In this document: piece after piece, positions 44,223-64,000 of the stretch
Layout: each line of letters begins with the position of its first letter
Numbering within the stretch: position 1 is the first letter of the stretch
Source: Ascidiella aspersa
Lineage: Eukaryota
Direction of reading: 5' to 3'
NCBI GenBank assembly: GCA_963924565.1
Contig: OZ004607.1
Coordinates: 28,024,001-28,088,000 of the forward strand
Length of the DNA stretch: 64,000 nt
The notes under the pieces: model-generated
Database searches by the model: none
What the model saw: only the letters and a program-made list of their open reading frames with translations
Told to the model about the DNA's origin: nothing
Program-made: the position numbers and the translations under genes

Positions 44223-47200
44223 CTGAACGAAAAATTAGAACATTTCGACAAACGAAACCAGAAAACTTGGACCATAGTGACAGTAGGCTATGTTGTAGTT
44301 GCACGTAGAATGGATATTAAAGTGCATACGGAATCAGGTTGCACTGGATCAATTGCATATATAGTATACTGATGAGGCAGATTCAGAACTATATTTTAAA
44401 CGTTTATAATGCCCTACCAAATATGCTCCCTATACTTCTCTACGGGCTCTGGTATTCATTCTATGCTTGTTATTTAAATTAGCTTAAAATTGTCACATAT
44501 AAAACTGATTAAAAAAATTATAACCCTTTTTCTTTATTTAACTGTAATAGCTGGATTTAAAAATAAAAAAATCGTTGCCCAGTTTAAGATTTACAATATT
44601 TAAAATACTAAATTAACCACTTATTGCAGTAGGATGTAGACTAAGACAAGTGCAGTCCTATTTCAAGTCTTATACATGATTGCTTACCCTTTGAGTTTGT
44701 CGAAGTAGCGCATAAAGTCGGACGCTTTGACCTCAGTGCCACGCAAAGTGAGCAGTTCAGTGACCAACTTGTGAATGAACATGTATTGTCCCTAAAACCG
44801 AAAGAAACAGTATTTAAACCATTGTGCCTGTTAAGATAACTGTATAGAACGCAGTATATAGCTTACAAATGAAATATTGCAAATATTAATTTAGTGCCTA
44901 AAGTGGTTATTGTTACGGACTTTTCAGTGCGCTAAGAAAGTTACATTTAAACTAATTGAGTGACTGTTGAGAAAATTATCTGGCAACTTTTGAAAAGTCA
45001 CAGGTTGAGAAGCCTGACTTTAGAATAGCGGACAAGACAATCAAGTAACATCCAAAATATCCCTTGAATGCAGAGGATTTCATTTTTTTTTATCTTATCC
45101 GTTCTTTTTTCTTTAGAAGAAAACAATGGATTTTAACCACCCTTGTCAAAGTATTAGGATAGACCTATTAGGAACAAAACACAAGAGCATGGGCCTAAAT
45201 GCTTTGCATTTAAATGAACCATAAGTTTCTTTACAAATAAAAAAATGCATACTACTTTTGGCTTTTTCCCAGTCAAACAAATGTAACAACTCCCTCAATA
45301 ATTTGTGAAATACCCCATACGGAGGGGGTAGTTACCCACAGGCTAAAAACTACTGTTTCAGTGTGAAATGAACGAGCGAGTTTCTCACCACAGTCTGAAC
45401 CATCTCTGTCCGGTTGAGCCTCATATTGTACACCACGCCGAAAACGTTGATCGGGCGCGAAGCGTCGTCTTTTTGCAGTTGGTCAATTAAACAGTCGAGG
45501 GCAATAAAGGTTCCGGTTCTTCCCACACCGGCGCTGTGCAAATTGAGTTAATGTGGTATCCGTGATTTTTCAGTATGTAACGATATATACATCAAAGATT
45601 CTCAAACTGGAGTCCACCTTTCCCATGGCTATGCGAGAAAAATATTTAGGGTACCAAGAATTTTTTTCGAAATTCGTTTTTCATATGAGCTAAGCATTGT
45701 ATTTAACAGCTGTGGCATTGTGATTTAACGACAGTTCAAAAATCATGTGCGGCATACTATCCTCGCTCGAAATCGAAAAAACATTTACGTAAACTGGCCA
45801 CGAGAAGCATTTTAAATCGTAGTACACAACTTTAGGAAGTCAAATATTCGCAATTTCATTTTGCTCTTAATACCGCGATTAAACGTTCGAAAGTGTTAAA
45901 AAATGTCCTACATGTGCGTATTCAATTTTTTTCAATAGCGTTTGCTAATACTGCGCGAAAAAAACTAAAATACCTATTAACTCAGAATAAGACTAAATAT
46001 ACCGTAGCACCAGAATGCATATCTGCCACCATTTTTTTCACATCTTTCGACAAAATATCATTCTAAATTGTTATTAGAAACTTTACAACATTAAACCATC
46101 ACAATTTGTGTACGCATATTCAAACTCGAGATTTTAAAATAAATACTCATATGATTAAAGTTAGCATGTAATTTGTCGTACGGAATAGAAAAAAACGTTT
46201 ACCTGCAGTGCACCACGATCGGGCCGGGCTTGCTGGTGGGCTGGGCTGACGTGGCGGCCTCATGGAGTCGGAAAATTGTCGACGTAATGTCAAGGATGCC
46301 GTGGTCGGGCCAGGCCACGAACTGGAACTGCTTTACTTCTATCGGGGTCTGTTTATGCGAGGCGATAAAAAGTTCGCTGTTACTGAAAACCACGTAAAGT
46401 TTTACGTAGAATGTCAATTGATCAACTCTGGATGTCAAAGTATTGGAATTTAACTACTTTTATATGAAAATAACGAATATCTTTTCTTGCAATGTACACA
46501 AGTATGCGATTTACTTTAGCATTTGAAAGCTAGAACTGCAGCCAATATATTTGGCAACTTATAATATAGGCCTACATACCGTATTTTACAGTATAATAGC
46601 CTCCTACTTTTTAACATATGCGGTAACTTTGAAAATGGTTGATGTTGCACTATTATTATATATACAACTAGCATAATTCAAGAATCACTTTATAAGACAA
46701 AATGTGTTTTGTCGTTTTTGTGATTAGGATTCTTGCAAAAAACCTACAAAACTTGGTGTATTAACTTGTGCTGTAAGCAAGCCATTTCAAATAAAATTTG
46801 GACATGAATCAATATTTCAGCAGGATCACTGTCTCGTAATAAAATATCCTTTTTTATTACTGCGGTGCATTTGTACAAATACCGCTACCTTTTATTATGC
46901 GTACCAAACCAACATACTTGGAATTTTCTATATGCTTAGGAAAACTTGGCGTGTTATGATTCATTTCGTGAAAGTGTATACTGTGCGCAACATAAATCAT
47001 TTTCTATAGTAGCAAAATGTATAGCAAATGTTTTGTACCAACACAACACTAAAATTTTACAGTCGTTTCTCCGCAGGTGTAGTGATTCGTATCGCGCTAT
47101 TTTTGACCTAGTTGTAATTCACCTGTATTCTTGGTGTAGTAACAGACAAGGTTCGACAGACGTAATCGCCAAACGATGTTTGACTCGTTTGTTTCACCAA

Positions 47201-50200
47201 GGTGTTTCCGTACTGTTCTTCCATTCCCAAGTTGGGCCAATATTTGTCGCATTTCTCCTAAAAATAATAAATGAGAGTTAAAACGAGGTCACGTTAAGTT
47301 TTTTTTAGCCGAAACATTTTGACTCAAAAATTTCGGCTCAGTTAATATATGGTTTCATTTTGAGAACGTTTCGATCATTCTTGTCCAAGTTAGAGCAAAC
47401 CAAAAAAGGTAAACCACGAGTCATTCAAAGAAAAAAAACTGGTTATAATTAGATTGACAAAACCGTAACAAAAACAGTGGCAGCTTTGAGCTTAATGTTA
47501 AATTTACTGCAGTATGTTAAATCATAATGTTTTACCAAGTGATAATATTGATAAAGATTAGTATGTTCTATTTTACATGTTTTATACTAACGGACGATAA
47601 AATATTAACACTTGTTTAGTTTAGGCAACAATTTTACACACGCTACGAAGATACATGCATTTTGAATAAAAAGGCAAAAATGACAGAACGTTAGAATTAT
47701 TTTTCCTCCACTTTAAAGTTAGCTAGAGAAATAGGCATTGCATTAAAATAACAATAAAGTAGATTTTCTTCAGCGCTAACCTTGTTGTTTTCCACCAGTT
47801 GAGTAAGCATCACAATTACCCGGCATTCGTTTTCGATTATCATCCGCCAGAAGTCGTCAGAGGTGTTCTTAGGACCTTGGGCCGCTATGAATTTCCTCTG
47901 TGTGGCGTAGCCCTGTTGTGTGGGTTTGTTTCGTTATATCTTCCTTCGTTTTATATGCATATAATTCTTGTACTTCACCAAAAAAATCGTTTTACATCGA
48001 CAGAAAAAGCTTGGCGACACCGAAATTGGATGCATATCAAAAAAAGTATATAATTAATGTTAGTGCTAAATTAACGTTCTTAGAAAAAGTCATTATTATG
48101 TTACTTCACACGACGTTTGTACAGTTAGGAGTTAATCTGGCGGACAGCAGAAAAAAACAACTAAACGAAAATAGGTTTGTGGTGTACACTTGTACAGGCT
48201 TATTTTTGGGATCTGCATAGCTGAAGCAATCCAAAAAATTAAACTACATTTTGGAGCATAATTGTTGGAGGTTGTAGTAAGACGTAACAAGAATATCAAA
48301 GCCCATACAGAAGTATAGGTATCATTTTGAACGTTTCACACTTACAATCAGTGCCTTCTCTCTATCTTAAAAATGAACAAAGAGTTATTGGAAACGTTCA
48401 AAATGATTTCTACTTCTGTATGGGCTTTGATATTTTTATTACGTCTTAACTACATTTACAGCAAAATAATCTAGCAAAGCTAGCAATTCAGGTCAGACAC
48501 ATTAACCAGATCTTAAAAAGATATATATATATTTCGCCAACTAAGGCATCGTCAGTATATCTTAATTCGAATGAATTAATGAATTGATTCATTCGAATTA
48601 AGATATACTGACGATGCCTTAGTTGGCGAAATATATATATATCTTTTTAAGATCTGGTTAATGTGTCTGACCTGAATTGCTAGCTTTGCTAGATTATTTT
48701 GCTGTTACTGATCAGGAATTAAGGTCGACATTTATCTTGCAAGGGTCAAGGTGATTTCTATTATTCACATATTCAGTGCAACATTAACTACATTTATACA
48801 TGGCATTGATTTAGCTTGGCTGTTTTGAATTTACCAATACTATTGGTTTAGCTGAGACACTATAGTTACTTTAAAACTTACGTCTATGTAAGAGGCGTTG
48901 ACGTAGTCAGACATCGCTTGGTTTGGAAGTTTTTTCAAAACAACTCTAGACTGGTCGCCTGCTCAATAACGACACGGTTAACAGTAGAAATGTTTTACAC
49001 TTTAAGTTTAAACTCCTTAAAATCATTTTTTGGTATAGTTTAGTTTATACAAGGCGAAATTTTGAGTGCGTGAGTGCGTGTGTTATTCAAACAACGCTGG
49101 TCGGTAAACGCAATTAAAATACAAAAATGAGACAGTGAAATATGACACATATGAACAGTACAGTGAATATAATTACTCATATGAACAATATTACCTATGT
49201 GGGGTTTCATTGGACACAAATGTCAATATACGGAGATGTCGCCACGGTGATTCATAAAAATGATAATCGAGGAAATTACATGATCGAGTGAGAAAACAGA
49301 ACACAGCAATCGAAGCAAACCTTTGGACGTTAACAAGCCAAAGTAGCCATTGGTATTGCCCTATAGTCAATAATTTACTTTCACTTCTGTTTCAAAGCAG
49401 CGAAGTAAACGAAGATTTAAAAATACTTAACTCTCAATCGACAATACCCGAAAGAATAAGGCAAATCTTAGTTGCCAGAGGAAAGTCAATCCAAAAATGA
49501 AGGAGTCATGTATCGAAATCAAAGAGAGGAAATCATGACCGCGCTTAGGCGTGATATGACGCCAGAGTAAGATCGAAAAAGAAGAAGGGATTTAACATGA
49601 GTTGTTTAACGTTTAAACGAAAGAAGTCGTAAAACGAATTCGTGAATTGAAGAAGTCAGTGCACACGTAAGAGTAAGCTATTGAAAAGATTTTATGACGT
49701 TACGGGAACAATATTTTTCAATGCATTTTACACAATTATGCCAATACACTTTCAACAGTCGACGTCGCAACCTTGGAAAAGGGTTGGTGCGAACTGTCGT
49801 GTGATTGGTTAGTGAAGGAAAAAGTAAATCTCTCCACAATACTCACTTTTACACGCTTTGGTATATTTTCCGTTAAAACGACTTTTTTTATGAGAACAAA
49901 TAAAGAAATCTTGTATTGTTGGGGTATGCTACAATTGGATAAGTAGTTATTCAATATCAAAGTTTTATTGAAAGGTAAAAATCAAAAACTTCTTGAAATC
50001 TCGATTACATTTTTGAATTAGACATTTTAAAGATCTTAACATTATTTTAACAAACATGGCATTAAGGAAAAGAGGAAACGGCAGAATTAAAACGACGCTG
50101 TAAGTAATCTCTGCAAATTGATTAATTACACAAGCGACTTACTTGGAAGAATGTTTTTGAACCTGTTCTTTCCGTGCTGCTGGGCAAGGACGGCGTACTT

Positions 50201-53200
50201 CGTGCTTACCTTCGCCTTTGCCACCATGTCTGGAAGAACTTTCTGCAACACAAACCGCATTTTAGTTTGGCGTAGATGTACAGAAATAGAGACTAAGATG
50301 TATTGTACATGGTACAACAAAGAGAGTTGGGCCCATATTCCGTCATAATCAACCACAATATAGTTGGGCTATATTAGTATTGCTTTAATTATTTAAAATT
50401 CACATCAAGCAGCAAAGCACCTCATGGTAATTTCACGATATTGCAGTGTTTCAAATAAAATATAAAATGAAACGACAGAACGACGCTAAGGTGTGGCCTG
50501 AAATTGGTCGGTTTTAATACGATGAATTCACATCAAGCAGCAAAGCACCTCATGGTAATTTCACGATATTGCAGTGTTTCAAATAAAATATAAAATGAAA
50601 CGACAGAACGACGCTAAGGTGTGGCCTGAAATTGGTCGGTTTTAATACGATGAAAAAATGGCAAAACATAACAACAAGCTATCAAAAAAGACTCTTTTGA
50701 TTCTGAAGTTATCCGAAAGAAGCCGATAACTCAGAGGCCTATAAGAATTTCAAATGGCGACAATAACATATTCAAACAAGCAATAAAATTATAAAAATCA
50801 ATTTTTTAAAGGAAACCTAGTTAGCTGACGTTTTCGTAAGCAAGCGTAGTTAGCTTTCACTGGTATTAAATTATCCTGAGCGATGCCATTCATTGACATA
50901 GGATATCATATCATCGGATACGATTCGACATTAACGGATATCCTCAAAGTTTGATATGACCACCCAAACACAAACGTGAACAAAATGCGCTTGCCTTGAA
51001 TTCGTCAGTAAACATCCGATCCTCGTTCGCCCGCTTTCGGCTGTAAACTTGGAGAAGGTTTTCCGGCGCGATATTGTATTCCGCAATCTTCAAGGCCACC
51101 AAATCAACTTCGCTCGTCTCACTGGCGTCGTCAAATGAGTCTGAATGAAAGACGCGTGCGATTAAATGTTGCTTATTGTATAAGCTGGGCGACAATGTGT
51201 AAACTCTTGTAAAGTGACTAAACAACACCAACCAAAATATTGATCGACTTTGATGAACAACTGGTTATAAATAACGTTTTGTTAAAATAGTAGCTTTGGC
51301 ATGTTAGTCTACCCCAAAACTGCACGTGTAAATCAGTTTCGTAACTTTACACGAACTTTTGTTCCTATCCAAGTCTGGTCAGCATTTTTATTGGTTAAAA
51401 TGTATTTTGCATTATAAAATGTAATAAGAATATCAAAGCCCATACAGAAGTAGGTATCATTTTGGACGTTTCGAATAACTCTTTATTCATTTTCAACATG
51501 TCACTTCTGTATGGGCTTTGATATTCTTATTACGTCTTACTACAACCTCCAACCATTATGCTCCAAAGTTCATTATAAAATGATTTGAACTTTACTTGCT
51601 CTGTTCATGTCTGGGACTGAGTCTCTACTTGTATTTAGTTAAAACGACTTGTTTATTATTGTGTTGAAAATGAAAATAGTCAACGAAAAAGCGAACTTAA
51701 AGAAAAGGTGCCAAGCACAACGTGTTGAGAAGCAAAGTTACCTTCCTGGTTAGCGTTGTGTTGGACTGGTCTGAGCGGCACGCGGTTATCCACAGGCACT
51801 GTCACGTTTCCGCTGGAGTCTCGCTTTCTCACGCGCTGACTTAACGGCCTGAATGAGAAAACAACGATTTCAAAAAGTATACGACGGTGCATAGGAACCT
51901 ATTTTTCTTTGACATTGCAGTCCCTTTAGGTTTAAACCAGGGCTCCTCGGGACTCGACGAAGTCGGTTTATTTCGCTGAGTTGGACTCGGGACTCGAGTA
52001 CGAATACTTATGACGACTCGAGTCCCCGTTACGATGTACGCATGCGCAGTACTAGACGTATAAGGTCGCAAACCGTCAATCGTAAATCATAAAGGTATTA
52101 GCATATAGTTAAATATTTTCGATCTATTAGTCACAACAACTACTTCCTGGTGTGCCTTGCTTAAGGCCGTGGTTTGCATCACGTCCTTACCTTCGGTAGA
52201 CAATGGCCAGAACAATTAGGATCAGTAAGACTATTGCCACGACAACCAATCCTACAATGAGCCCGATGTTAGAAGAAGGCGGCGATGGAGGCAAAGCTGA
52301 AAATACAATCAAATGCAATTATTTAATAAGGTTTGCTGTGGTTGTTAGATTTCAAAAAAACGGTTTGACTAACTATTTTTTTCGTTTTTTTTATCTTTAT
52401 AGTTTTCAACTGTACATGTATAGTAGACAACCTAAATGATTTCAGAAATCATGCAACTTAAAGCCTTTTTAATCTAATCGCTGCGTCTAAAAGGGGTCAT
52501 CGCCATGATTGAGTTTGACCACTTTCAAATAACAACAAACAAAAAAAAGCAATTACGTTTCTTTGCCACAAAAGGGCTAGAAGGCGAACTGGCAACAAAG
52601 AAAGGAGAAGCAGATCTCCCACTGACACCAGGGCCACCACCAGGCGAATTATTGGGGGTCGCAGTCACCACGTAATACTGGTAGGAGGCTCCGGGCTCAA
52701 GCTTTCGGTTTTCGGCGCGCACGACTGATCCGAGGCTACGTCGTAACCGCGTCGTGTTGACGCCACACGTTTGCGAGCCGTTCGTCGTTATTGCTGAGAC
52801 GTCACAGCAGGACGTAGATCCGTCGCCCAGCGTTAACCGCGTTGACGTTTTAATGCTGAGAAGGTAATTCAACGTAAATGTCAATTGCTACATAGTTAAA
52901 ACAAACGTGCAAACCAAGATATATTTCGCCGCAGCTGCATGTGAAGATGATAAAACGTTTTGTTTTAACTTTTATGGCATCTTTGGAAATGACATTAAAA
53001 TGCTAATTTCTGTAAAAAATGCCACATCTAGAGTCGTCAATCTGCTTTTTGTGAATGCGAGTTCAGTGACGATTAATTGTACACTGTCTGTTTTACCAAG
53101 CTGTAACTCGACTCGAACACGGCTAACTGTGTTTGGTATATATCTTTATAAAAAGCGAAATGACGCGCACCTTGATTTCGCTACAGCGACGTAAGGTTCC

Positions 53201-56200
53201 CCGGGTAGAACTGTGTCACCAGCCTGCTTTAACTTGGTAACATCAGCTTCTGAGTGGTTTGTTGATTGGTTGACGACTTTGTAGGCCACCACAAAATAAC
53301 AGCTGCAATTCAGTAATTTAGTGAAATGGTTTGAATTAATAAGTAACAAAGCGTTTCTCGTATAACATTTTAACAAACCTGATGGCGCCGTTTCGTTCGC
53401 TCGTAGGCTCCAATGTTATTTCCATTCCATTTGCATTCGGCGCAGGATTCGTTTGCGACAGTTTAACAGACGTTGGACCTGTTCAAACATGACAAAAGCA
53501 AAGTTCTTACAAAATCGAAAAAAACGTATGTTCACTGTTCAGGGCATTTTGGACGTTTCATGTGTTGCAGGAACAACTACCAAATCCAATCAACTGAAAA
53601 GAGGTTATAGACAGTAAATCGCGAGCCTTTTTTAATATTTAGAAGGGTTGCACTTACTTAATTAAACATAAAGAAAATATCGTTGACTGATTTGAAGCAA
53701 ACCTAGTTTCAACAATACGTAACATTGAATAAAAGCAAAACGTCAATTTATACAATAAAATAACATACGATTGTTTCCGTTTAATTTAGGCTTTAGCAGG
53801 CATTTTGTGTTACCTTTCGAAGTAGTAACACAACTTCCAGTCGAAAATGTAGACCAAGCCGGTAAAACAAGTCCCTTGCAATTTAAGAGGGGCATCACGC
53901 CAACACTGACCGAGTAGTTGGTATTTGGAAGCAAATCCCCTATCACATAGCTTAATGCCGATTTCGACAAATTTACAAATCGAGTCTCTCCTTCGTTCGA
54001 CGACCCTGGGACGTTTGCGGTGTAGGACAGCTAGAAACAAAATATAAAGTTTCAATCGTCCAGTAAAGGTGTATTTTGCTTTGAGATCGCTTTTACTATA
54101 AAGAGCATAAAAGGTACGCCAAAGTGTGTTGTTAACAAATTATAATTCTTTAATCTTCTAGTAAAGGTGTATTTTGCTTTGTGACCGCTTTTACCATTAA
54201 GAGCATAAAAGGTACGCCAAAATGTGTTTCTAACAAGACATATAATGCTTGTATCTCAGGCATGTCATGCCCCTCTAGTTTCCACCATCAACAACGTTTA
54301 ATTGGTTAAATGGAATTAAACGATGCTTTCAACTGAGCGGTAACTAACAAATGTGTTATATTGCAACCAAGTCAAAGTCGCAGTGGTTATTTATTGCACA
54401 TAAAACCGTTTATATATTTTATCAAGCCATGGGTAGCAAGACTTTGGTTGGTCTTAGCAGTTACTTACGAAACGTTGGTAATCGGGTCAACACTTTGATT
54501 ACATATCACGCACTTTCCATAAGGTCGCTCGCGTTATTGGTTTAGATTGGAAGCCTAAAATGTATGCCATCTTACCCAAGCATTTAAACATGATAAGCAA
54601 GTAATGTTTCACATCTTAAATCCGTAAAAAAACATAAGGATAAATACAAGATCCAAAAAGCAATAAATTAATTCCCGGTTCGACATGGTGCTTTGACCTT
54701 AATAATCCTAAATAACCTGCTTTAATACTAAAAGTTAATTATTTAAGTTTGTTATAAAAGAAAACGCCAAACTGTTGAAAATTAGGACTGTCGTGATAAG
54801 TAAAGATAAAGCACTATTAAAGTCACTAACTAAACATTAACACGCCGCTAGAAAAGATGTAAAACAAAAATTGTTTTGCTTTAACGAGCATAGCAGTTCG
54901 ACACAATTTTTTTTAAATTACTGCTGTGCTTGGTTCCTCTTTTTTAACTTAATCTCACATACGTTGGTTGAATAGAATTTGCTTTGATTGTTATTTTGCT
55001 TCCATGTGATCATACACCTTGTTGTTTCGAGTTGCAAACGAACGTTGTAGGGCGGTTTTAAACTGGGATCGGGAGTTTTAATAACAGTCTGCTTTGATGG
55101 TTTGAAATCTCGGCATCCTTCGAACATGGGAAAAACCTACGTATATAAAACATTAGGTATACAAATATGAATGGACCAATGTTTGATATATAACAGGGGT
55201 GGGCAACCTAAGGGGCCCACAGGCCAAATCGCGCCCGACCAATCAATATCATCTCAATAAATTAATCTTTAAAGAAAATCTAGAACATCCAGAATATAAT
55301 TAAAAAAAAGGTTCTTCTGAATAATATATTCATAATTTGTTTCACAAACCATTTACAGTATATGATATATCCGCCACCTCCTTTGGTAAGAGGTCATTCC
55401 TCATTATTTATTAGATATTTTAACTCGGTAAATGTGAACAATTTTCTGCCTAAAAGCGCATTGTTCACCAAGGATTGGAACTATCAACAACAGAAGTTTC
55501 ATCGACTTCTTGTGTCTGAATGCATAATTGTCAGTTAAAATTTATTACGGTATGCAGAGACGTTTCCGAGGTTAGTTTGGCCCGCGACTAGAAAAAGGGT
55601 TGCCCAACCTTGATAACTTTCAGCAGCTATTAGATGACATCGTCTGGTCCTTGACTGCTGGGGGGTCCGATTGGCTTTGGGTTATAATTTCGGTTAACGC
55701 TGAGGTCATTTATAATCAATCAGGAATTGGACAGAAGTGAGTTAAGGGTTAATTGGCGTGTTAACGCTTAAACGACTCGATCGGTACACCATATGGGAGG
55801 CTGACGGCGTACTTTAAAAATTATTCAACCAAGCTTTGGCGCTTTGCAAAAAAGGTGAAAAGCCTTAGGTGGTAAGATTTAGTTCTGGTTTGAAGATGCA
55901 ATAAATATACAGATAGGGACAATTTCGAGCAACGATCGAAAACTGTTTGCAGAAATTTAGTTTGGATTAGGCCATAATCCCGTAACCAGAAATCCGGCAA
56001 TGTCATTCAAAAAATTATGTTTGTTTAAATATATGTGAAGGTTGATCCGTGACGATAAAAAAACGTTTAACCGCATTTATAAAATTTGATTAAAATTATA
56101 TTTTGCTTGTACACTGTACAGGTACTATTGGTGATAAAACTTAATCTAATTACTTTTTGTCTAATCCTGAATGACACGTTATTTAATTTATTTTCTGCAT

Positions 56201-59200
56201 AGTTTATTTATACATTTGTTGATTAATATTAAATGTTATTGTAACCTGTAGTAACCTATAATTATTATGCCACTCCTCAATATCACTGCCTTTGTAGCAC
56301 ATAGATGGTATATTCCCACAAACGTACTGGCAATTAGTTTAGTAAGTCAAAGTTAAAAATTCTCTGTGTTCTGAATTATAAATTCTTACCGTTACATTGT
56401 AGGAACTACCTCCTTGTAAATTGGAAATGATAACATTAAACTTTCCCGGATCAACAATTCTAAAAATTAAAATAAATTTAAGGTAGTTCAACAGAAATAA
56501 AAAATATATATATTGACACTGAATGAAACCAAACCTTGTCATTCCATTGTATTCCAGTTTATGTTGAATCGATAAAGTTCCCGGAAGTAAATTCCAACTA
56601 ACATTCACTTTGCTTCCGTTGCATTTGTCTGACTTGTATCTGATTGTAGGCTGTACAGAACTGGAAGCTATATAACATAAAATAGCTTTCATGAAAGAAT
56701 TTGAATACTTACAGTACCAGATTGTTTTAGGCCAAAAAAGTAGCACCCATTCTTTTTCACTTTGAGCAATGAGAATATTAACATATTTTGTATTACAGGT
56801 ATTAGTATCCTCATTAAAATTAACTATTACTTTTATGTTTTTAAATTTAATTTTAAATGATGAGATATAAAACTAATGCACACAAAAAAATATATTAATT
56901 GGTTTAAAATTTGATAAGCGTCCAGAGCTACATACTTTTAAACACAACAATTAGCTTAGACAATGGCATAACATGAAATTACAAAGAGACCTAATAAAAC
57001 CAACAAAAAGACAAACTCGCTGTATAGAAAGTGATAGTCTAATGAAGTGGTTATTTTTGTTTGCTTTATCTTTTAAGTAAATTTGAAAATAATTGCACAA
57101 ACTTTATAGAAAAAACCTTTTATACACTATGTGTAAATTTCCAGATATTGAATCAGGTGGGATTTATTAAAAGTATTTTTAAACTATCAAAATACAATAA
57201 TTACCAAACCCTGGACTTACCATCACAAATTCCGACTACTTTTCCAAAAGGGGGATATTGGTAGTTTTTATATGTTCCAATCCATATCTTCTTACATGCA
57301 TTGTTGCTATACTGAGAAAAATACTTTGAAATTCCTGCAATCCAAACATTTCTTCTACCTAAAAATAAGGCATGATAAATATAAATTGTTTATCAAATGA
57401 ATTAACTAAAAACATATTACCAAAGTTTAGCATATATTCTGAATCTGCTTTATTATCAATAACAGCCAGATGTCCATTTAGGGCTTTGCACGATTCGATA
57501 GCTTTTGTGCATGATGTGGGTTTAGATAACAAGTTCCACATGTTTACTAAAAATGCACAAATTGACATAATTACACTGCATCAAAAATGTCCTGGATTGT
57601 TTAAAACAAATATACCATATGTGTAAAAACATGTCAGACCTGGTGAAGATTTATATGTTTCACTTTCCGATGGCAACTTTGAATATATATTGTCAGCAAA
57701 GCATTTGTAAAGAAATGATGCAGTAGATGGGCAGATCACACCATAAACCATCAATTCTTTTGTGACTATGTGTAATTTCCTGTCTTCATAGTTTAAAACC
57801 TATATGTGAATTCAGTAGAACCATCATCCAAGTGAAATAGTAATGATTTTATATTTTACGGACATAGCCAGTACAAGCAAACTAGATACAGTCAGTAGTA
57901 AGTACAAGTAAAAATATATAATGTATATATATAATAAATTGTTAGGTAATCTAAAATAGAGTGTTTATATTTAATAAAAGTACAGTTGCTGTCGAAATCA
58001 ATATTTTCTATATATAACCACAGAATTTCAATTTGTCAATACTGCAATAGCATTACCATTTTTATACAGTAAAATATTTATAAATTGGCAAGGATTAAAA
58101 TGGGTATTTGGTTTCGAAGTTTAAACGTAAAATCAGCCAAAATATTTTAAAGCAAGTGTTTTAAAACAAAAGCTTAAATAACATCAAACATGAGCACAAG
58201 AGTAAGAGTAACAAATATGTAAAACAATAGTCGCTAATTAAAATACAAACGTTAGAGCAGTGGTTCTCAACCTTTTTGTTCTCGCGACCCCTTTTGAGTT
58301 TTCAATAACTTTCGCGACCCCCCAATTATAGTGTGTGATACATAAACCTGAGTAAATAAAACACATTTTAAAATTGGCAAAATTCGAATAGGAAAAAAAT
58401 CTAGTTGGTGTGAAATTCAGAAATTTTAGGTCAAATAATATTAAGCATGTACCTCCTAGTGTGAGACTGAAGAGAATCAATGGAGGTAACTGTTCTTGGC
58501 GAGCAGCCAAAATTCCTTACAAATTTGAAAAAAAAACTGTTAGTAACAATTTTTTTTTATTTTCGTTGGTAAAGTTGGTATAAACAATTTTGGAGGTCTT
58601 TTGAGCCCGTGGATTTACTTTATCCCACAATATTTCAAATAAATTCGGCCAAATAGAACAGAAAGCTTACTGTCCTAATAATTTAAAAACCGTCGGACAC
58701 AGCAGTTAAAATTAAGACAATTTATCGTTTTTGGCCCAAATTTTGTAATCGTGACGTCATACACGTGACAGGTTCACTGCAGCAAAAGCCACACAAAGAC
58801 AAATATTAGACTGGCGTTGCTTTTGTGCATTCTATACTGCTAAACTTTTGGTTCATATTGCTTTTTTTCATGAAGTTTTTCTTTATCAAACACTACACGG
58901 CGACCACCCAGACAACCATTTGCAACCCCCAGGTTCACAACCACTGCGTTAGAGTATTTAAAAAAGAAGAAACAATATTTTAGCACACCTGAAACTGGCT
59001 AGTCTTAGGTAGCAAACTTCCATTTGCAAACTTCCAAACAACATTTGGTAGGGGGTTCCCTTGAAAAGAACAGTTGAAACTAACTGAGTTACCCACTGGC
59101 ATAACTTTGTACTTGGAAGGGATTTCTTCTGGAACACCTTAAGTACCATTTACAACAGTATATTACTGACCAAAGATAAATAAAAAATGGTGGTTTAACT

Positions 59201-62200
59201 ATGACTAAATTTGCAATATAAAAAGAGGCCTAAATGAATAATAGAATTAACACTACTTAAAAATGTTCAGTGGTGTAAAAAGGTAATAAGCAAAATTTTG
59301 AATTTGAAATAACATAAAACATTTTAGAAAGCTATAATTTCAAGAATTTTAATCAATGCATATTCAGCTGTGTTATTTTCCTAATTACCTCATATAACCA
59401 CTTGCAAATCATCTTGTTAAAACAGAAGCTATTAAATATATGAAGCTTTTAATATTTATTTTGGTGGTCTCTTTTCACATTGAAGAATACACATAAATCA
59501 GTGCTTAGTGTTGCAAATTATAATTTATTTATAATTATTATTAGGAAACTCTATGAAGTCAGTTATTTATTAAACAAACATGCAAATGAATATTAATGCA
59601 AAATAATTTTAAACTAAATTAAATATTAACAATTTGTTTAAAAATACTTGCCTTTATAATTATATAATTCTGTTTAAATCAATCATGATTCTTCAGTTAA
59701 TGCAAAAACAAAATGTAAACTGACCTTCTATTGTTATTGTTACACTTTTTGTGACAGGAACAGTTGCAAGCTTGCTTTGAACAGTGCAGACATATACTCC
59801 ACTGTCTTCATACCTGGCCTGTAATGTCACATTGTATTACTTATGTCGCATGAAGCATGATAACAAATTTTAAACATTTTTTTAGACTTATACACACGAC
59901 AAACAAGAACCTTGGGATACTTGCCTTGTTAAACCTCAGACACATAATATTTGTTGATTGGTTTCCTGTGATAGACTTTTGGTAGTAAGGTTTTGTAGAC
60001 ATTTCGACATAGACATTTCGACCACTTCTTTTCCAAAAGACGTCAGGTTTAGGGTTTCCACTTCCAGAACAAAAAATATCGCATCCCAACTTTGTTTGAT
60101 TTCGATTTAATTTTAGAGTTGTCAACGACACATAAGAAGTTGGTAAAACTACAAAGAAAATTATCTTAATAATTTTTCAACTATGTGACTCTGCATTTCA
60201 AAACATAATTTTTTTGCAGAAATTTATTTAATAAAAGATCCAAAGTTTAAAATCCAATATTTTAAGGAACTGCCTGTCTTGATTTGTTTTAATATTTACT
60301 AAATATTAACAATTTGTTTTAAATTCTCACCTTGCACATCAACATAAACCATCTTTGTATCACGAATTGCAGTATTGTCCGAAAATAAACAAGTAATTGT
60401 ATAGTTTGTTGGCTTTTTAAGGACCCCAGCTTGGTAAACAACTCTTAAGAAAAATGAAAAACACAAAGGTTTGGATACGAAGAAAACAAATATATCACAA
60501 TCCCACAATTTTTTTTAAGACAATAATTATGATAATTTCCCACTTCTCTTGATTTGTGTATATTTTAAGCCGACGCCCAGTGATGGATTTAACTTCGCAA
60601 ATGTAACTTCCAGCAATTCGTGTGACAATGTTTGCTGTTACACTTGCGCTTTTTCCTTTATTAACTACAATATGTTGTGTTGTGTTAATTTCAATTTTTC
60701 CTGAAATGACAAAAAATAGCTAAAATGGCTAAAATGACAATATGATCCTGATCAAATCACAACTTCCAAAAAGTAACTAAAAGTATCTAAAAATAGAGAT
60801 ATATATCTAAATAAAAAAACACATTTTACTTTTTAACAAATAAACAAATGTGATGTTATGAAGTACATATATATCTGGAATATATAAACATTGCGGAGTT
60901 ATCTCACTTGTTTCACAATTGAGTCCTTTATAGTTCAAGGTGCATGCACAAGTGTAACTGCAGCCAACTACTGTGCAAATGCCTCCATTTTGACATCCCT
61001 TTTTGCAGAAATTGGAAAAGCTTAAAGCTGTAAACAGATAACAATTGTTATAATTAAAAAATATTTTATTGTTTATTACTCTTATACCTTTTTCGCAAAC
61101 ATAAAGAGCGGTGGAAGTACATGAGGCTTGTCGATAAGAAGTTGAGCTTGATTGCCCACAGTAACCTGAACCTGAAAATTATATAATTTAATACAGTATT
61201 TCCCAAAATATTTGAGTACGTAGCAAACACTCCTACCAGTGACAAATTGTCCTGTGAAATTTGAATTATCATTCCAGGCCCAAAATTGAGTTTTCATTAA
61301 TCCAACAAAATAAAATTTTTCCAATGGCAATTTTGACTGTATATCAGTTTTAAGTATGGCTAATGATGATTTTACTGTATTGCATTGGCGTTTGGCATCA
61401 TCATAAGAAGTTGCTGGAAAGTTGGATATGGTGTACTGACACTTCTTTACTGTTGAAGTGTAAGTCTGCCATTTTTCTAAGGAAAAGTCAAACAAAAGTG
61501 ATCACAAAAAAGCAAACTGCAAATTAGCCAAATAAACTAAAGCATGGTTTTATAATGTCGTCATGCTCATAACCAAATTGCCTAAGTCATTTTTTTAAGA
61601 TTTTTAAAGTTTTTGCTTAAGTTCCTTGTGACCATCCCCATTCCATGGAAAAAGTGCGTAAGTCATTTTTTGCACAAGCACATGGAAAATGACCAAAAAA
61701 TGACATTAGTTTTATTTTTTTATTTTCGATGATGCGACCCTCCTTAAAAATAGAACAACAACAAAACACAAGAGCAGTTTTTCTATGGATGGCGATGGTA
61801 ACAAGGAGTGACTTAGGCAATTTGGTTATGAGCGTGACGATGTAACAAATGAGGTAAAGCATATTTATACCTTGACATTGAGGAGCTGGATTGCTCCACG
61901 TGCCTGAATTGCATGTTGCAGATGTGTCGCCTACAATTTGGTATTCACTGAAACATGAAAATGTGCAGAACGTACCATGTGGACACCGAGAGTAACGGCA
62001 ATTGGAACTTCCACACTCAACAGATCCATGCGGCAACGCCAAAGTTGAGCATCTTTGTACTACAAATGAAAAATGAAAAATAGTTATTTATGAGTTTAAG
62101 TTAAAAAATAAAATGTTTATTTTTTACTTCGGCTTTTTCTATAAGAATATTAATACAGAAAAAAAACTTGGGTAATGAAAAATAGGAGGTTGGTAATGAA

Positions 62201-63469
62201 AATAGGAGGCAAAAGTATTTTTCTAATTTATTTACCAAACAAAACATACACTTATGATTATCTTTGGACAAAATAAATTACAATACCTCTAATTAGTCAT
62301 CTGTCCATAGGAAGTATACTACAGACCAGTTATAAACAGGTTTTATAATAACCAACTTAAGCATATAAAAATTTAGCAGTCAGTGATTTATTTTAATATT
62401 TTTGCTTTACTATTCATTTCTGCAACTAAGCCATTGCCGGTTCTAAGTTTTAAGCTTCAAAAAGTCGTTTTCAAAAGTTTTACAAAATAAAAAGGCACTG
62501 CCATGACACCAACTTTAGAATGGAAAAATGAAAGCAATCAAAAAGTTGGAAAAGTTCGATTAAACAACATAAATAAAAAAGTACCTTGACAAGTTGGTGT
62601 AGACTCACTCCATCCTAAGGATAAACAACGTGCAGTAACTTTAGTAACAGGCGTGTAACCGACGTTACATTGGTAGTCACACAAAACATTGTATGGACAA
62701 TGAGTGTTGTCACAACTTAATGAACATGAAATCTTTCCTCGGGAAAGCATTGTTGGCTTCAGGCAAGTAATTGCTGTTGGTAGAGGACAAACGTTAAAGG
62801 TAAAACTTGGTAATCCTAATTGTACAAAGTACTATGATTATAAGCCTAAATAAGGAAAATGAACACGTTAAATCATTTTTATTAGGTAATTTATTGTGAT
62901 TCAAATATTAGAACTCAATGAAATTGAATAAAAGGAATGTTTTTAAATCAATAAAAGGAATGTTTTAAATAAGTGCATGGCGGTAACCAAATTTAACTTG
63001 CATATTTGTGTAGCTACCCCTGAAATACCAGTGGTTGCATGAAAATGAATAGGCTTTTGCGTTAAATAATTCAATTTAAGCAATTTTCATGGTATTTTTT
63101 AAACAAATCCACAAATTAAAAAACAACCTGAAAATCTTTGGTTTTAGACTTTATTTTTGAAAACTAAAATGTTAATAATCCCTCTAAATGAAAATAAGTA
63201 TTCTTACATATAACAAATTATAAAAAAAATCTGAAAAAGTAAAGCTAAAGCTGTTTTCAAAACAATAAAAACAAAAATACCTTGACAAGTTGGTGCAGAC
63301 TCACTCCAACCAGTGGATAAACAATATGCAGTGAGTTTAGCAACAGGCGTGTATCCATCATTACATTGGTAGTCACACGAACCATTGTATGGACAATGAG
63401 TGTTGTCACATCTTGATGAACATGAAATATTTCCTCGGGAAAGCATTGCTGGCTTCAGGCAAGTAATTG
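38705..63469 (-). CDS. Receptor-type protein tyrosine phosphatase with a Sushi-CTLD-EGF-Ig-CTLD-FN3 ectodomain, TM helix and tandem PTP D1/D2; 5' end lies beyond position 64000
   Basis: 37 phase-consistent exons: 63281-63469, 62585-62773, 61871-62059, 61237-61476, 61088-61171, 60908-61027, 60544-60700, 60331-60443, 59925-60148, 59725-59818, 58989-59137, 57640-57799, 57421-57546, 57221-57358, 56535-56667, 56390-56459, 54963-55136, 53814-54030, 53379-53478, 53171-53302, 52557-52855, 52191-52296, 51742-51848, 50995-51140, 50143-50242, 48882-48958, 47781-47912, 47123-47257, 46203-46348, 45389-45533, 44688-44791, 44083-44222, 43824-43900, 42943-43059, 42605-42739, 41302-41465, 38705-38915 (about 1780 codons, TAG at 38705-38707). 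Confidence 0.9.
44688..51140 (-). CDS. RPTP membrane-proximal catalytic domain D1
   Basis: Motifs KNRFKNILP, DYVNASYI, FIAAQGP, DDFWRMI, IVMLT, KCDKYWP, WPDHG, PIVVHCSAGVGRTG and MVQTVGQY. Confidence 0.95.
48249..48454. mobile_element. Foldback MITE family member; other copies at about 12818-12900 and 51421-51568
   Basis: Shared arm TTGGAGCATAA..TTGGAGGTTGT..AAGAATATCAAAGCCCATACAGA and its reverse complement. Confidence 0.75.
48458..48705. repeat. Perfect inverted repeat with 119-bp arms (48458-48576 and 48587-48705) and a 10-nt spacer
   Basis: Base-by-base reverse complementarity of the arms. Confidence 0.95.
50397..50654. repeat. Perfect 128-bp tandem duplication in an RPTP intron
   Basis: AATTCACATCAAGC...TAATACGATG is repeated identically at 50397 and 50525. 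Confidence 0.95.
52191..52296 (-). CDS. RPTP transmembrane exon
   Basis: IGLIVGLVVVAIVLLILIVLAIVY followed by RR stop-transfer residues. Confidence 0.92.
54062..54236. repeat. Imperfect intronic direct repeat, about 99-bp period
   Basis: AGTAAAGGTGTATTTTGCTTTG...AAGAGCATAAAAGGTACGCCAAA occurs twice. Confidence 0.85.
55194..55612. mobile_element. Degenerate hAT MITE
   Basis: CAGGGGTGGGCAACC ... GGTTGCCCAACCTTG; no clear TSD. Confidence 0.6.
58258..58946. mobile_element. hAT MITE in an RPTP intron
   Basis: TIRs CAGTGGTTCTCAACCT / AGGTTCACAACCACTG, perfect TSD CGTTAGAG, GCGACCCC repeats. Confidence 0.88.
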
Positions 63470-64000
63470 CTGTTGGTAGAGGACAAAAGTTAAAGGTTAA
63501 ACTTGGTAATCCTAATTGTACAAAGTACTATGATTATAAGCTCAAATAAGGAAAATGAACACACTAAATCATTGTTATTAGGTAATTTATTGTGATTCAA
63601 ATATTAGAAATTGAATAAAAGGAATGTTTTGAAAATCAATAAAAGGAATGTTTTAAATAAGTGCATGGCGTTAACCAAACTTAACTTGCATCTTTCTGTA
63701 GCTACCCCTGGAATACCAGTGGTTGCATCAAAATTATGATTTTGTGTTAAAACAATTCAATTTTTTAATTTTCATGGTATTTTTGAAACAAATCCACAAA
63801 TAAAAAACAACCTGAAAATCTATGGTTTTTCACTTTATTTTTAAAACAACTAGAATGTTAATAATCCCTCTGAATAAAAAAAAAAAAAATTCTAAAAAAG
63901 TAAAGCTAAAGCTGTTCTCAAAACATTGACAAGTTGGTGGAAACTTATTCCAACCAGTGGATAAACAATATGCAGTGACTTTAGTAACAGGCGTGTAACC
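62585..64000 (-). repeat. Tandem duplication of a Sushi exon plus intron unit (periods about 696 and 645 bp; at least 3 exon copies, the last cut by the window edge)
   Basis: Exons 62585-62773, 63281-63469 and 63925->64000 are near-identical, and so are the introns 62774-63280 and 63470-63924. Confidence 0.92.

What the first reader, a model, noticed from the sequence alone, without database searches (positions are those of the whole stretch)
52191..64000. Receptor tyrosine phosphatase with a selectin-like/lectin ectodomain that fits no classical RPTP subtype
Exons splice in phase to give Sushi(>=3)-CTLD-EGF-Ig-like x3-CTLD-FN3 x2-membrane-proximal FN3-like-TM-D1-D2. Vertebrate R1-R8 RPTP ectodomains use Ig, FN3, MAM and carbonic-anhydrase-like domains, not Sushi or CTLD. 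CTLD, EGF and Sushi together are the selectin domain set. Neither CTLD shows an EPN or QPD sugar-binding motif, which suggests protein ligands. Inference: a lineage-specific adhesion, immune or allorecognition receptor built by phase-1 exon shuffling.
Basis: partly seen in the sequence, partly recalled or inferred. Interest (0 to 1): 0.75.

Follow-up and report, generated by a model that had tools for sequence, protein, structure and literature searches.

The report
Sea-squirt receptor phosphatase with mosaic ectodomain
This is a real sea-squirt gene for a cell-surface tyrosine phosphatase whose outer part is built from Sushi, lectin-like, EGF, antibody-like and fibronectin modules; similar unstudied genes exist in other sea squirts, so it is unusual for vertebrate biology but not unique.

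Summary
All 26 modelled ectodomain and TM exons have AG acceptors and GT donors (one GC) and stay in phase. The order is Sushi array, compact CTLD, EGF, three Ig-like domains, a second compact CTLD-like domain, two FN3, a membrane-proximal FN3-like domain and TM. Two PTP domains follow at 50368-38708, outside the stated coordinates.

New points. The Sushi array runs past the window end: seven 189-nt exons, one with an in-frame TGA. The supposed start of CTLD2 is really the second half of Ig3. D1 keeps its catalytic motifs. D2 lacks the P-loop arginine. The D2 end and tail resemble PTP alpha/epsilon (R4).

The gene is single-copy here. Predicted receptor phosphatases of Clavelina and Styela match it in the same exon order. 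Ciona, Phallusia, amphioxus and bivalve models also carry CTLD or Sushi, so the architecture class is public but, in eight literature searches, undescribed.

This scan had already noted lectin-type receptor phosphatases elsewhere in this genome, not at this locus. Immune or allorecognition function remains untested.

The parts
63925..64000 (-). Window part of Sushi exon S4. The whole exon is 64113-63925 in extended numbering. It has an in-frame TGA at 64021-64019, just past the window end.
   Evidence: 189-nt phase 1-1 exon with AG and GT flanks. TGA where S1, S5 and S6 have TGT. Sushi 14.6 bits on the window part.
63281..63469 (-). Sushi exon S5 (189 nt, phase 1-1)
   Evidence: Sushi 28.9 bits..
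62585..62773 (-). Sushi exon S6 (189 nt, phase 1-1)
   Evidence: Sushi 26.5 bits..
61871..62059 (-). Sushi exon S7, second sequence type (189 nt, phase 1-1)
   Evidence: Sushi 25.3 bits..
61088..61476 (-). CTLD1, compact with no long loop. Exons 61476-61237 and 61171-61088, separated by a 65-nt intron.
   Evidence: E 1.5e-5 (profile positions 6-75) and E 0.036 (positions 99-119). CLEC5A; matches the CTLDs of P0170 and P0103.. No Pfam hit.
60908..61027 (-). EGF exon (phase 1-1)
   Evidence: EGF 16.8 bits, below cut-off. EGF repeats of P0103, P0163 and P0001..
60331..60700 (-). Ig1, degenerate Ig-like. Exons 60700-60544 and 60443-60331.
   Evidence: Phases fit. Two cysteines. It occupies the place of the first Ig-like domain of Clavelina P0160. 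No significant domain hit, so this is inferred.
59725..60148 (-). Ig2. Exons 60148-59925 (GC donor favoured) and 59818-59725.
   Evidence: Ig_3, Ig_2 and I-set, all below cut-off; phases. Spacing to the F-strand cysteine equals that of Clavelina Ig2.
57640..59137 (-). Ig3. Exons 59137-58989 and 57799-57640, split by a 1.19-kb intron that holds an interspersed repeat.
   Evidence: I-set 28.3 bits; 60-61% identity to P0157 up to the predicted donor, second half 41%; repeat.
57221..57546 (-). CTLD2, compact CTLD-like. Exons 57546-57421 and 57358-57221.
   Evidence: Lectin_C 14.8 bits. E 0.0016; 4 of 5 weak PDB hits are CTLD proteins; hhalign 85% for the Clavelina counterpart, N-terminal half only.
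53814..56667 (-). FN3-1 and FN3-2. Exons 56667-56535, 56459-56390, 55136-54963 (spans the junction of the two domains) and 54030-53814.
   Evidence: fn3 18.7 bits; colinear hits; splice choice fixed by the match VFPMFEGC to ILPLFLGC of P0002.
52557..53478 (-). Membrane-proximal FN3-like domain. Exons 53478-53379, 53302-53171 and 52855-52557.
   Evidence: colinear with P0002, P0157 and P0001.. No Pfam hit.
52191..52296 (-). Transmembrane exon. The hydrophobic stretch IGLIVGLVVVAIVLLILIVLAIV is followed by YRR.
50947..51264 (-). Juxtamembrane or wedge region (ORF-level coordinates)
   Evidence: P0002 residues 785-816 and P0004 residues 376-430.
44687..50368 (-). PTP domain D1, about 7 exons (ORF-level coordinates). 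Motifs present: KNRF, WPDHG, VHC|SAGVGRTG and QT..QY.
   Evidence: 5 ORFs hit Y_phosphatase; the AG|C split codon gives HCSAG..
38708..44287 (-). PTP domain D2, about 6 exons (ORF-level coordinates). P-loop is CSDGSSKSG with no arginine. Tail is FDLYGNFK, then stop.
   Evidence: alignment to PTP epsilon and alpha D2..

Best explanation
One minus-strand gene encodes a type I receptor tyrosine phosphatase.

Shown:
- The outer part is a chain of separately encoded modules, mostly bounded by phase-1 introns. The order is a Sushi array that has recently duplicated exon by exon, a compact CTLD, EGF, three Ig-like domains, a second compact CTLD-like domain, two FN3 and a membrane-proximal FN3-like domain. 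One transmembrane helix follows.
- The inner part has tandem PTP domains of the alpha/epsilon (R4) kind.
- D1 has the full catalytic motif set.
- D2 keeps the cysteine but has lysine in place of the P-loop arginine.
- The tail ends in a YGNF tyrosine, at the position of the tail tyrosine of PTP alpha.
- The gene belongs to an ascidian-wide group of mosaic-ectodomain R4-like receptor phosphatases.

Inferred mechanism:
- The ectodomain binds protein ligands, not sugars, on other cells or in the matrix. Neither CTLD has a calcium or sugar-site motif.
- Binding changes clustering or access of D1 to phosphotyrosine substrates. By analogy with PTP alpha these would be Src-family kinases.
- D2 and the tail tyrosine serve as regulatory or docking parts.
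For: - Exon chain: AG and GT flanks with compatible phases from Sushi to TM. Introns are 65-1190 nt, and no signal-peptide-like start exon was found inside the chain (scan of 76000-61000).
- Domains.
- R4 affinity: the D2 last exon scores PTP epsilon 105.5 and PTP alpha 98.4 bits against PTP sigma 85.7. The D1 P-loop exon scores PTP alpha 61.2 and PTP epsilon 56.7 against PTP sigma 52.2.
- Colinear relatives: Clavelina P0157 matches 14 of 22 exons in order, and Styela P0001 matches 8 of 22 in order. Clavelina RefSeq P0002/P0151 runs from Ig3 through CTLD2 and FN3 to D1 and D2.
- Complete models with a hydrophobic N-terminus and a lectin, EGF or Sushi head on tandem PTP domains: P0163, P0170, P0185, P0103, P0034.
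- Single copy: the CTLD1 and Ig3 exons match only themselves in the genome.
Against: - There is no RNA evidence.
- Sushi exon S4 carries an in-frame TGA. It must be skipped, which is frame-neutral, or the product is truncated.
- The first exon is not identified. There is only a candidate, 5.3 kb upstream of the first Sushi exon.
- CTLD1, CTLD2, EGF, Ig1 and the FN3 domains are all below Pfam cut-offs when read exon by exon.
- The C-terminal half of CTLD2 matches no profile.
- One D1 exon does not favour R4: PTP sigma 67.9, CD45 66.8, PTP epsilon 65.2 bits.
- No stored relative has both Sushi and Lectin_C by Pfam (0 of 19 scanned).
- Ligand, substrates and D2 inactivity are inferred, not shown.
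Confidence: 0.75

Rival explanations
1. There are two transcription units. A secreted or separately anchored Sushi-CTLD-EGF(-Ig) protein is encoded upstream, and a conventional Ig/FN3 receptor phosphatase starts further down. The in-phase chain would then be a by-product of all modules being phase 1-1.
For:
- Phase 1-1 modules always look spliceable.
- RefSeq splits one Clavelina paralogue into an N-terminal model (P0160) and a phosphatase model (P0004).
- RefSeq P0002 starts only at Ig2.
Against: - The Clavelina split falls inside an FN3 domain. P0160 ends in the first half of FN3-1 and P0004 starts with its second half, so it looks like an annotation break.
- Together, P0160 (EGF to FN3-1) and P0002 (Ig2 to D2) overlap.
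- Styela P0001 carries a Pfam Sushi domain upstream of stretches that match CTLD1, EGF, FN3 and the membrane-proximal exons in order, and it ends in two PTP domains.
- No start exon candidate lies between 64000 and 52296 except one ORF at 61862, which sits inside an intron just past a Sushi exon.
- No exon in the chain ends in a stop other than S4.
Confidence: 0.12
2. The locus is a decaying or non-functional copy. The Sushi stop, the degenerate Ig1 and the weakly scoring CTLDs are signs of relaxed constraint, and no full-length protein is made.
For: - TGA in S4.
- dN/dS among the type A Sushi exons is 0.57-1.53, with dS of 0.02-0.27.
- Several domains score below Pfam cut-offs.
- No expression data.
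Against: - All other modelled exons (25 of 26, including the three Sushi exons beyond the window) are open, with intact splice sites.
- All D1 catalytic motifs are present.
- The four cysteines and the tryptophan are kept in 6 of 7 Sushi exons.
- S4 can be skipped without a frameshift.
- The D2 peculiarities and the tail are shared with Clavelina. That indicates an old, conserved state, not recent decay.
- Exon-wise scanning lowers Pfam scores by itself.
Confidence: 0.1
3. It is a true selectin-type receptor: the CTLD-EGF pair binds sialylated or fucosylated glycans in a calcium-dependent way, as in vertebrate selectins.
For: CTLD1 is followed directly by EGF, and Sushi repeats are present.
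Against: - Neither CTLD has EPN, QPD or a C-terminal WND site, and CTLD1 lacks the long loop (profile positions 76-98 are unmatched).
- The Sushi repeats lie N-terminal to the CTLD, the reverse of selectins (selectin order recalled).
- The cytoplasmic part is two PTP domains.
Confidence: 0.03

Closest known systems
Clavelina lepadiformis LOC143445616 cluster (XP_076800965/6, XP_076800967, XP_076800968; GenBank CAK8678004-6), uncharacterised predicted receptor phosphatases
   Same: - Same order from Ig3 through compact CTLD, FN3, FN3, membrane-proximal domain and TM to D1 and D2.
- The Ig3 first exon is 60-61% identical.
- D2 also lacks the P-loop arginine.
- The tail ...FDLYGNFK is the same.
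- CAK8678005 also has Sushi and EGF at its N-terminus.
   Different: - Clavelina has six calcium-binding EGF domains and two Sushi. This gene has a Sushi array, CTLD1 and one EGF.
- Clavelina has several tandem paralogues. This genome has one copy.
Styela clava XP_039254382.1 (named 'tyrosine-protein phosphatase 69D-like' by its source)
   Same: - It is the best hit of the D2 exon (E 4.1e-34; 70% identity over that exon in tblastn).
- It has a Pfam Sushi domain, then stretches that match CTLD1, EGF, FN3-1, FN3-2 and the membrane-proximal exons in order, then D1 and D2.
   Different: - It has no counterpart of Ig2, Ig3 or CTLD2.
- The model lacks a signal peptide.
- The individual exon matches are weak.
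Vertebrate R4 receptor phosphatases (PTP alpha, PTP epsilon)
   Same: - Tandem D1 and D2.
- Best PDB matches for the D2 end and the D1 P-loop exon.
- The C-terminal tail tyrosine aligns (YGNFK against YANFK).
   Different: - R4 ectodomains are short, glycosylated and without domains (abstract of PMC10369406, seen in the listing). This one has about 15 modules.
- D2 here has lysine for the P-loop arginine.
Other ascidian lectin-type receptor phosphatases (Ciona XP_018667200.2; Styela XP_077975591.1, XP_077966184.1, XP_077976615.1; Phallusia CAB3265293.1)
   Same: Lectin_C together with EGF, Ig or fn3 on tandem R4-like PTP domains. In Styela P0170 a CTLD is followed directly by EGF and then Ig.
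   Different: No Sushi by Pfam. Their CTLDs are canonical in length. Many sit in tandem arrays.
Selectins, and the thrombomodulin/CD93 group of CTLD proteins (both recalled)
   Same: The domain set CTLD + EGF + Sushi on a type I membrane protein, with a CTLD-EGF junction.
   Different: Different order, no sugar or calcium motifs, and a phosphatase tail. No sequence relationship was tested beyond domain level.

Membership tests
Classical receptor-type PTP (class I Cys-based) | PTP domain with KNRY-type, WPD, HCX5R and Q-loop motifs in D1 | tested here: met
   Y_phosphatase in 5 D1 ORFs. The ORFs and the split codon show KNRF, WPDHG, VHC|SAGVGRTG and QT..QY.
Classical receptor-type PTP (class I Cys-based) | Single transmembrane helix between the ectodomain and the PTP domains | tested here: met
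   The TM exon 52296-52191 holds a 23-residue hydrophobic run followed by YRR. No prediction program was run.
Classical receptor-type PTP (class I Cys-based) | N-terminal signal peptide | tested here: inconclusive
   Only a candidate start exon, at extended coordinates 73599-73476 (MTTHRLLKLVIFSLIC...), with a phase-1 donor. There is no transcript or homology support.
R4 subtype (PTP alpha/epsilon) | D1 and D2 closest to PTP alpha/epsilon | tested here: inconclusive
   Summed bits over three exons: PTP epsilon 227.4, PTP alpha 223.7, PTP sigma 205.1, LAR 195.8, CD45 180.0. Alpha or epsilon lead in 2 of 3 exons. No tree was built.
R4 subtype (PTP alpha/epsilon) | C-terminal tail tyrosine (Y-x-N-F-K) | tested here: met
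   YGNFK aligns with YANFK at the end of PTP alpha chain 6uzt.
R4 subtype (PTP alpha/epsilon) | Short ectodomain without domains | tested here: not met
   About 15 domain modules.
Selectins | N-terminal CTLD with a calcium and sugar site (EPN and WND), then EGF, then Sushi repeats, and a short tail (features recalled) | tested here: not met
   The Sushi repeats precede the CTLD. There is no EPN or QPD, and the long loop is missing. The tail is D1-D2.
Ascidian mosaic R4-like receptor phosphatases (unnamed; database predictions only) | The same order of ectodomain modules plus D1, an arginine-less D2 and the FDLYGNFK tail | tested here: met
   Clavelina P0157 matches 14 of 22 exons in order.
C-type lectin-like domain (both copies) | CTLD fold | not testable with these tools
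The sequence evidence is partial: CTLD1 E 1.5e-5 and CTLD2 E 0.0016 against a local profile, and hhalign 85% over 41 columns for the Clavelina counterpart of CTLD2.

The most novel reading that the evidence does not exclude
The recently duplicated and fast-changing Sushi array makes this single-copy phosphatase a variable recognition receptor, with a variable outer tip on a conserved stalk. Amino-acid and silent changes are about equal between copies, and one copy has already been knocked out. Such a receptor could act in self/non-self, gamete or microbe recognition, and it would signal by dephosphorylation directly, without ITAM or ITIM adaptors.
Probability: 0.1. Interest if true: 0.75.

Novelty: new variant of a known kind. 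Interest (0 to 1): 0.4.

Why it matters
Textbook classes of receptor tyrosine phosphatases come from vertebrates. There, the alpha/epsilon type has almost no ectodomain and no known ligand. Here the same kind of catalytic tail carries a long adhesion- and lectin-type ectodomain. Relatives in at least three other ascidian genera, in amphioxus and in bivalves do likewise.

This suggests two things. The bare vertebrate R4 ectodomain may be a derived state. Invertebrate chordates may offer R4-type receptors with tractable ligand-binding parts.

For this locus alone the gain is modest. It is a well-defined, single-copy, conserved member that could be used to test what such ectodomains bind.

Tried and rejected
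What led nowhere or was rejected:
- RNA evidence. One search found one RNA run (X3) and two runs of unrecorded kind.
- Structure of the CTLD2 counterpart. No fold search was run.
Its organism is unknown.
- Reciprocal search of the own genome with Clavelina P0160. It was swamped by giant EGF-repeat frames on contig C4 and was uninformative.
- PDB search with the D2 WPD-region ORF: no hit.
- My first reading of 57799-57640 as the start of CTLD2, and my idea that Ig3 lacks its second half. Both were rejected after I read Clavelina P0002 and ran.
- My first reading of the open frame ...VRIYNSEHREFLTLTY as the end of FN3-1. It was rejected because no donor precedes its stop. The donor at 56390 joined in phase to 55136 reproduces the Clavelina motif.
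- Literature. Eight searches were counted and none showed a paper on ascidian lectin or Sushi receptor phosphatases. In PMC12582321 I read passages only; it mentions only CD45-like receptor phosphatases in Botryllus. All other papers were seen as search listings only. The 1991 report of many PTP domains in Styela plicata is recalled, not seen. Supplementary files were not consulted.
- No D1/D2 tree was built.
Full report
WHERE AND WHAT. The window is G000:C1:28024001-28088000 of a 308.6-Mb assembly in 75 contigs. Earlier notes of this scan call it a sea squirt, and the closest database proteins are ascidian. The feature lies on the minus strand. The coordinates given (52191-64000) cover the ectodomain and the transmembrane exon. 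The two phosphatase domains lie downstream at 50368-38708.

METHOD LIMIT. Every scan, search and alignment used single exons or single open frames, and the spliced protein was not built or searched. This lowers all domain scores, because most domains are split over two or three exons.

CHECK OF THE OBSERVATION. Pfam, exon by exon:
- Sushi is above cut-off in 3 of 3 complete Sushi frames (28.9, 26.5, 25.3 bits; cut-off 20.7). The partial copy at the window edge scores 14.6 bits.
- I-set scores 28.3 bits on the first Ig3 exon.
- EGF (16.8), fn3 (18.7), Lectin_C (14.8) and the Ig2 pieces are below cut-off.
- Nothing is found for the 2 CTLD1 frames or the 3 membrane-proximal frames.
- Y_phosphatase is found in 7 of 10 cytoplasmic frames.

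To test the CTLDs without joining, I built a profile from 19 CTLDs of 12 related ascidian phosphatases. I searched 216 minus-strand frames of the region. The three best were CTLD1a (E 1.5e-5, profile positions 6-75), CTLD2a (E 0.0016, positions 7-41) and CTLD1b (E 0.036, positions 99-119). CTLD1 is therefore a CTLD without the long-loop region. Its only PDB hit is CLEC5A, at E 0.17. For CTLD2, 4 of 5 weak PDB hits are CTLD proteins (E 0.43-1.1). The Clavelina counterpart of CTLD2 aligns to the CTLD profile with 85% hhalign probability, but over 41 N-terminal columns only. Reading the exon peptides shows no EPN or QPD motif in either CTLD.

EXON MODEL. All exons have AG acceptors and GT donors (one GC), and the phases fit throughout.
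- Sushi: 63469-63281, 62773-62585, 62059-61871.
- CTLD1: 61476-61237 and 61171-61088.
- EGF: 61027-60908.
- Ig1: 60700-60544 and 60443-60331.
- Ig2: 60148-59925 and 59818-59725.
- Ig3: 59137-58989 and 57799-57640.
- CTLD2: 57546-57421 and 57358-57221.
- FN3-1 and FN3-2: 56667-56535, 56459-56390, 55136-54963, 54030-53814.
- Membrane-proximal domain: 53478-53379, 53302-53171, 52855-52557.
- TM: 52296-52191.

Domain-boundary introns are phase 1. The exception is the junction between FN3-1 and FN3-2, which has no intron.

Three readings changed on the way.
- The piece taken for the start of CTLD2 is the second half of Ig3. Clavelina P0002 reads ...SQFQV...ILTVYGVQCKETSLFSYKCSA..., and exon Ig3b aligns there.
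- FN3-1 ends by splicing 56390 to 55136, not by reading through.
- An AAG|GCAAGT donor in Ig2 gives the canonical spacing to the F-strand cysteine. A GT donor 14 bases further on also keeps the frame.

Ig1 is inferred from position and cysteines only.

THE SUSHI ARRAY. It continues beyond the window. There are seven 189-nt phase 1-1 exons, at 68172, 67680, 66948, 64113, 63469, 62773 and 62059 in extended numbering.
- They lie in a tandem structure of units about 700 bp long. The units are 84-96% identical, introns included.
- S1 and S5 are 98.4% identical. S3 and S7 are 96.2% identical.
- Among the type A exons, dN/dS ranges from 0.57 to 1.53 at dS 0.02-0.27. With 62 codons per exon this is suggestive only.
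- Exon S4 spans the window end. It has TGA where S1, S5 and S6 have TGT. Its splice sites are intact, and skipping it keeps the frame.
- The start exon is unknown. A scan of 76000-61000 for ATG-led hydrophobic frames with a phase-1 donor gave 5 rows (4 distinct candidates; two share one donor). The most plausible is at 73599-73476.

THE CATALYTIC HALF.
- D1 shows KNRF, WPDHG, VHC|SAGVGRTG (AG|C split codon) and QT..QY.
- D2 reads CSDGSSKSG, so the P-loop arginine is replaced by lysine. Clavelina has glutamine there. That D2 is inactive is inferred from what is established about the CX5R loop.
- The D2 last exon matches PTP epsilon (105.5 bits) and PTP alpha (98.4) ahead of PTP sigma (85.7). 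The tail ...FDLYGNFK aligns with ...FSDYANFK of PTP alpha.
- The D1 P-loop exon gives PTP alpha 61.2, PTP epsilon 56.7 and PTP sigma 52.2 bits.
- Another D1 exon is a tie: PTP sigma 67.9, CD45 66.8, PTP epsilon 65.2.
- That Y-x-N is a Grb2-SH2 type site, and that the PTP alpha tail tyrosine docks Grb2 and Src, is recalled knowledge.

RELATIVES. I searched the D2 exon against 1.84 billion representative proteins. It gave 1944 hits at E up to 0.001, 607 at up to 1e-10 and 4 at up to 1e-30.
- Named top hits are ascidian: Styela clava, Clavelina lepadiformis, Ciona, Phallusia. After them come salamander PTP epsilon, starfish, amphioxus 'PTPRA', a sponge and bivalves.
- In tblastn of the 150 listed proteins against the window plus L004, 7 of 150 had ectodomain matches at E up to 1e-3.
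- Clavelina P0002/P0151 (RefSeq) matches in the same order from Ig3 through CTLD2, FN3 and the membrane-proximal domain into D1 and D2.
- The GenBank model P0157 has Sushi x2, EGF x6, Ig x2, fn3 and PTP x2. It matches 14 of 22 of our exons in order. Styela P0001 matches 8 of 22 in order: CTLD1, EGF, FN3-1, FN3-2 and the membrane-proximal exons. It also has a Pfam Sushi domain. The single-exon E-values refer to one subject and are weak. The shared order is the evidence.
- Pfam on 19 relatives: 7 carry Lectin_C, 7 carry Sushi, and none carries both.
- With local profiles on 186 stored proteins: 15 have a CTLD, 7 have Sushi, and none has both at 1e-3. P0001 was borderline for a CTLD, at 0.00099.
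- The exact combination seen here is therefore not in the set I examined. Its parts and their order are.

WITHIN THIS GENOME.
- The CTLD1 and Ig3 exons match only themselves.
- The D2 exon has 55 other matches at E up to 1e-8, and 53 of them lie on contig C6. None exceeds 63% identity (150 of 164 candidates were scored, so the counts are lower bounds).
- The gene is thus a single-copy outlier beside the large tandem families that earlier notes of this scan describe on other DNA. I did not re-examine those loci.

ONE GENE OR TWO. For one gene:
- short introns and unbroken phase;
- no internal start candidate;
- the Clavelina and Styela models with the same exon order;
- five related models with a hydrophobic N-terminus and a lectin, EGF or Sushi head on tandem PTP domains.

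The RefSeq split of one Clavelina paralogue falls inside an FN3 domain. I read it as an annotation break. Against one gene: no junction was seen, S4 has a stop, and the first exon is unknown.

COMPARISON AND NOVELTY. It works like, and is, a receptor-type PTP. Its catalytic half is closest to R4, but it fails the R4 ectodomain criterion. It is not a selectin. The nearest things are unstudied database predictions in other ascidians. Eight literature searches found no description of them. I rate it a new variant of a known kind, of moderate interest.

WHAT COULD NOT BE DONE. There were no reads, no structure prediction, no Atlas search and no contig look-up.

Noticed in passing
window 58241-58666 (intron inside Ig3): This is a copy of an interspersed repeat. 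A 501-base query (58200-58700) had 104 matches genome-wide. Its two ~150-base ends are alike and in other loci lie about 700 bases apart in the same orientation. It explains why this intron is 1.19 kb when its neighbours are 65-700 bases.
   Followed up: partly
G000:C6, about 28.0-32.6 Mb (also 5.0-8.0 Mb): 53 of the 55 other genomic matches to the D2 exon lie on this one contig, many spaced 15-50 kb apart. This looks like a very large tandem expansion of receptor phosphatase genes. Five of the 53 have a stop inside the match.
   Followed up: no
G000:C4:33063813-33079745 and 33351264-33418411: Giant open frames of 3412-5504 codons, packed with calcium-binding-EGF-like repeats. They are 53-59% identical to the EGF part of Clavelina P0160.
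   Followed up: no
window 16060-16236, minus strand: EGF-like matches to the EGF repeats of Ciona P0103 and Styela P0023 (E 0.0005-0.008). This may be another EGF-containing gene in the window.
   Followed up: no
L005 6824-7402 (G000:C1:28104824-28105402), minus strand: An open frame of 193 codons with a GRPRK (AT-hook-like) stretch. It is probably the next gene upstream, and it bounds the 5' end of the phosphatase gene.
   Followed up: no
window 59925/59924 (Ig2 internal intron): A probable GC-AG intron with donor AAG|GCAAGT. It fits the canonical Ig spacing and the Clavelina homologue better than the alternative GT donor 14 bases downstream.
   Followed up: partly
extended 66141-66657 and 68689-69217 (L004 2141-2657 and 4689-5217): A 0.5-kb segment, 92% identical between its two copies. 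It lies once upstream of Sushi S1, and once downstream of S3 and upstream of S4. It marks a block duplication (segment, then type A, A and B Sushi exons). It has no domain match and its role is unknown.
   Followed up: partly
window 28974-30020, minus strand: A single open frame of 349 codons, rich in Ser, Pro and Tyr motifs. It is the last exon of the neighbouring gene that earlier notes connect with a hAT capture at 23201-24422.
   Followed up: no
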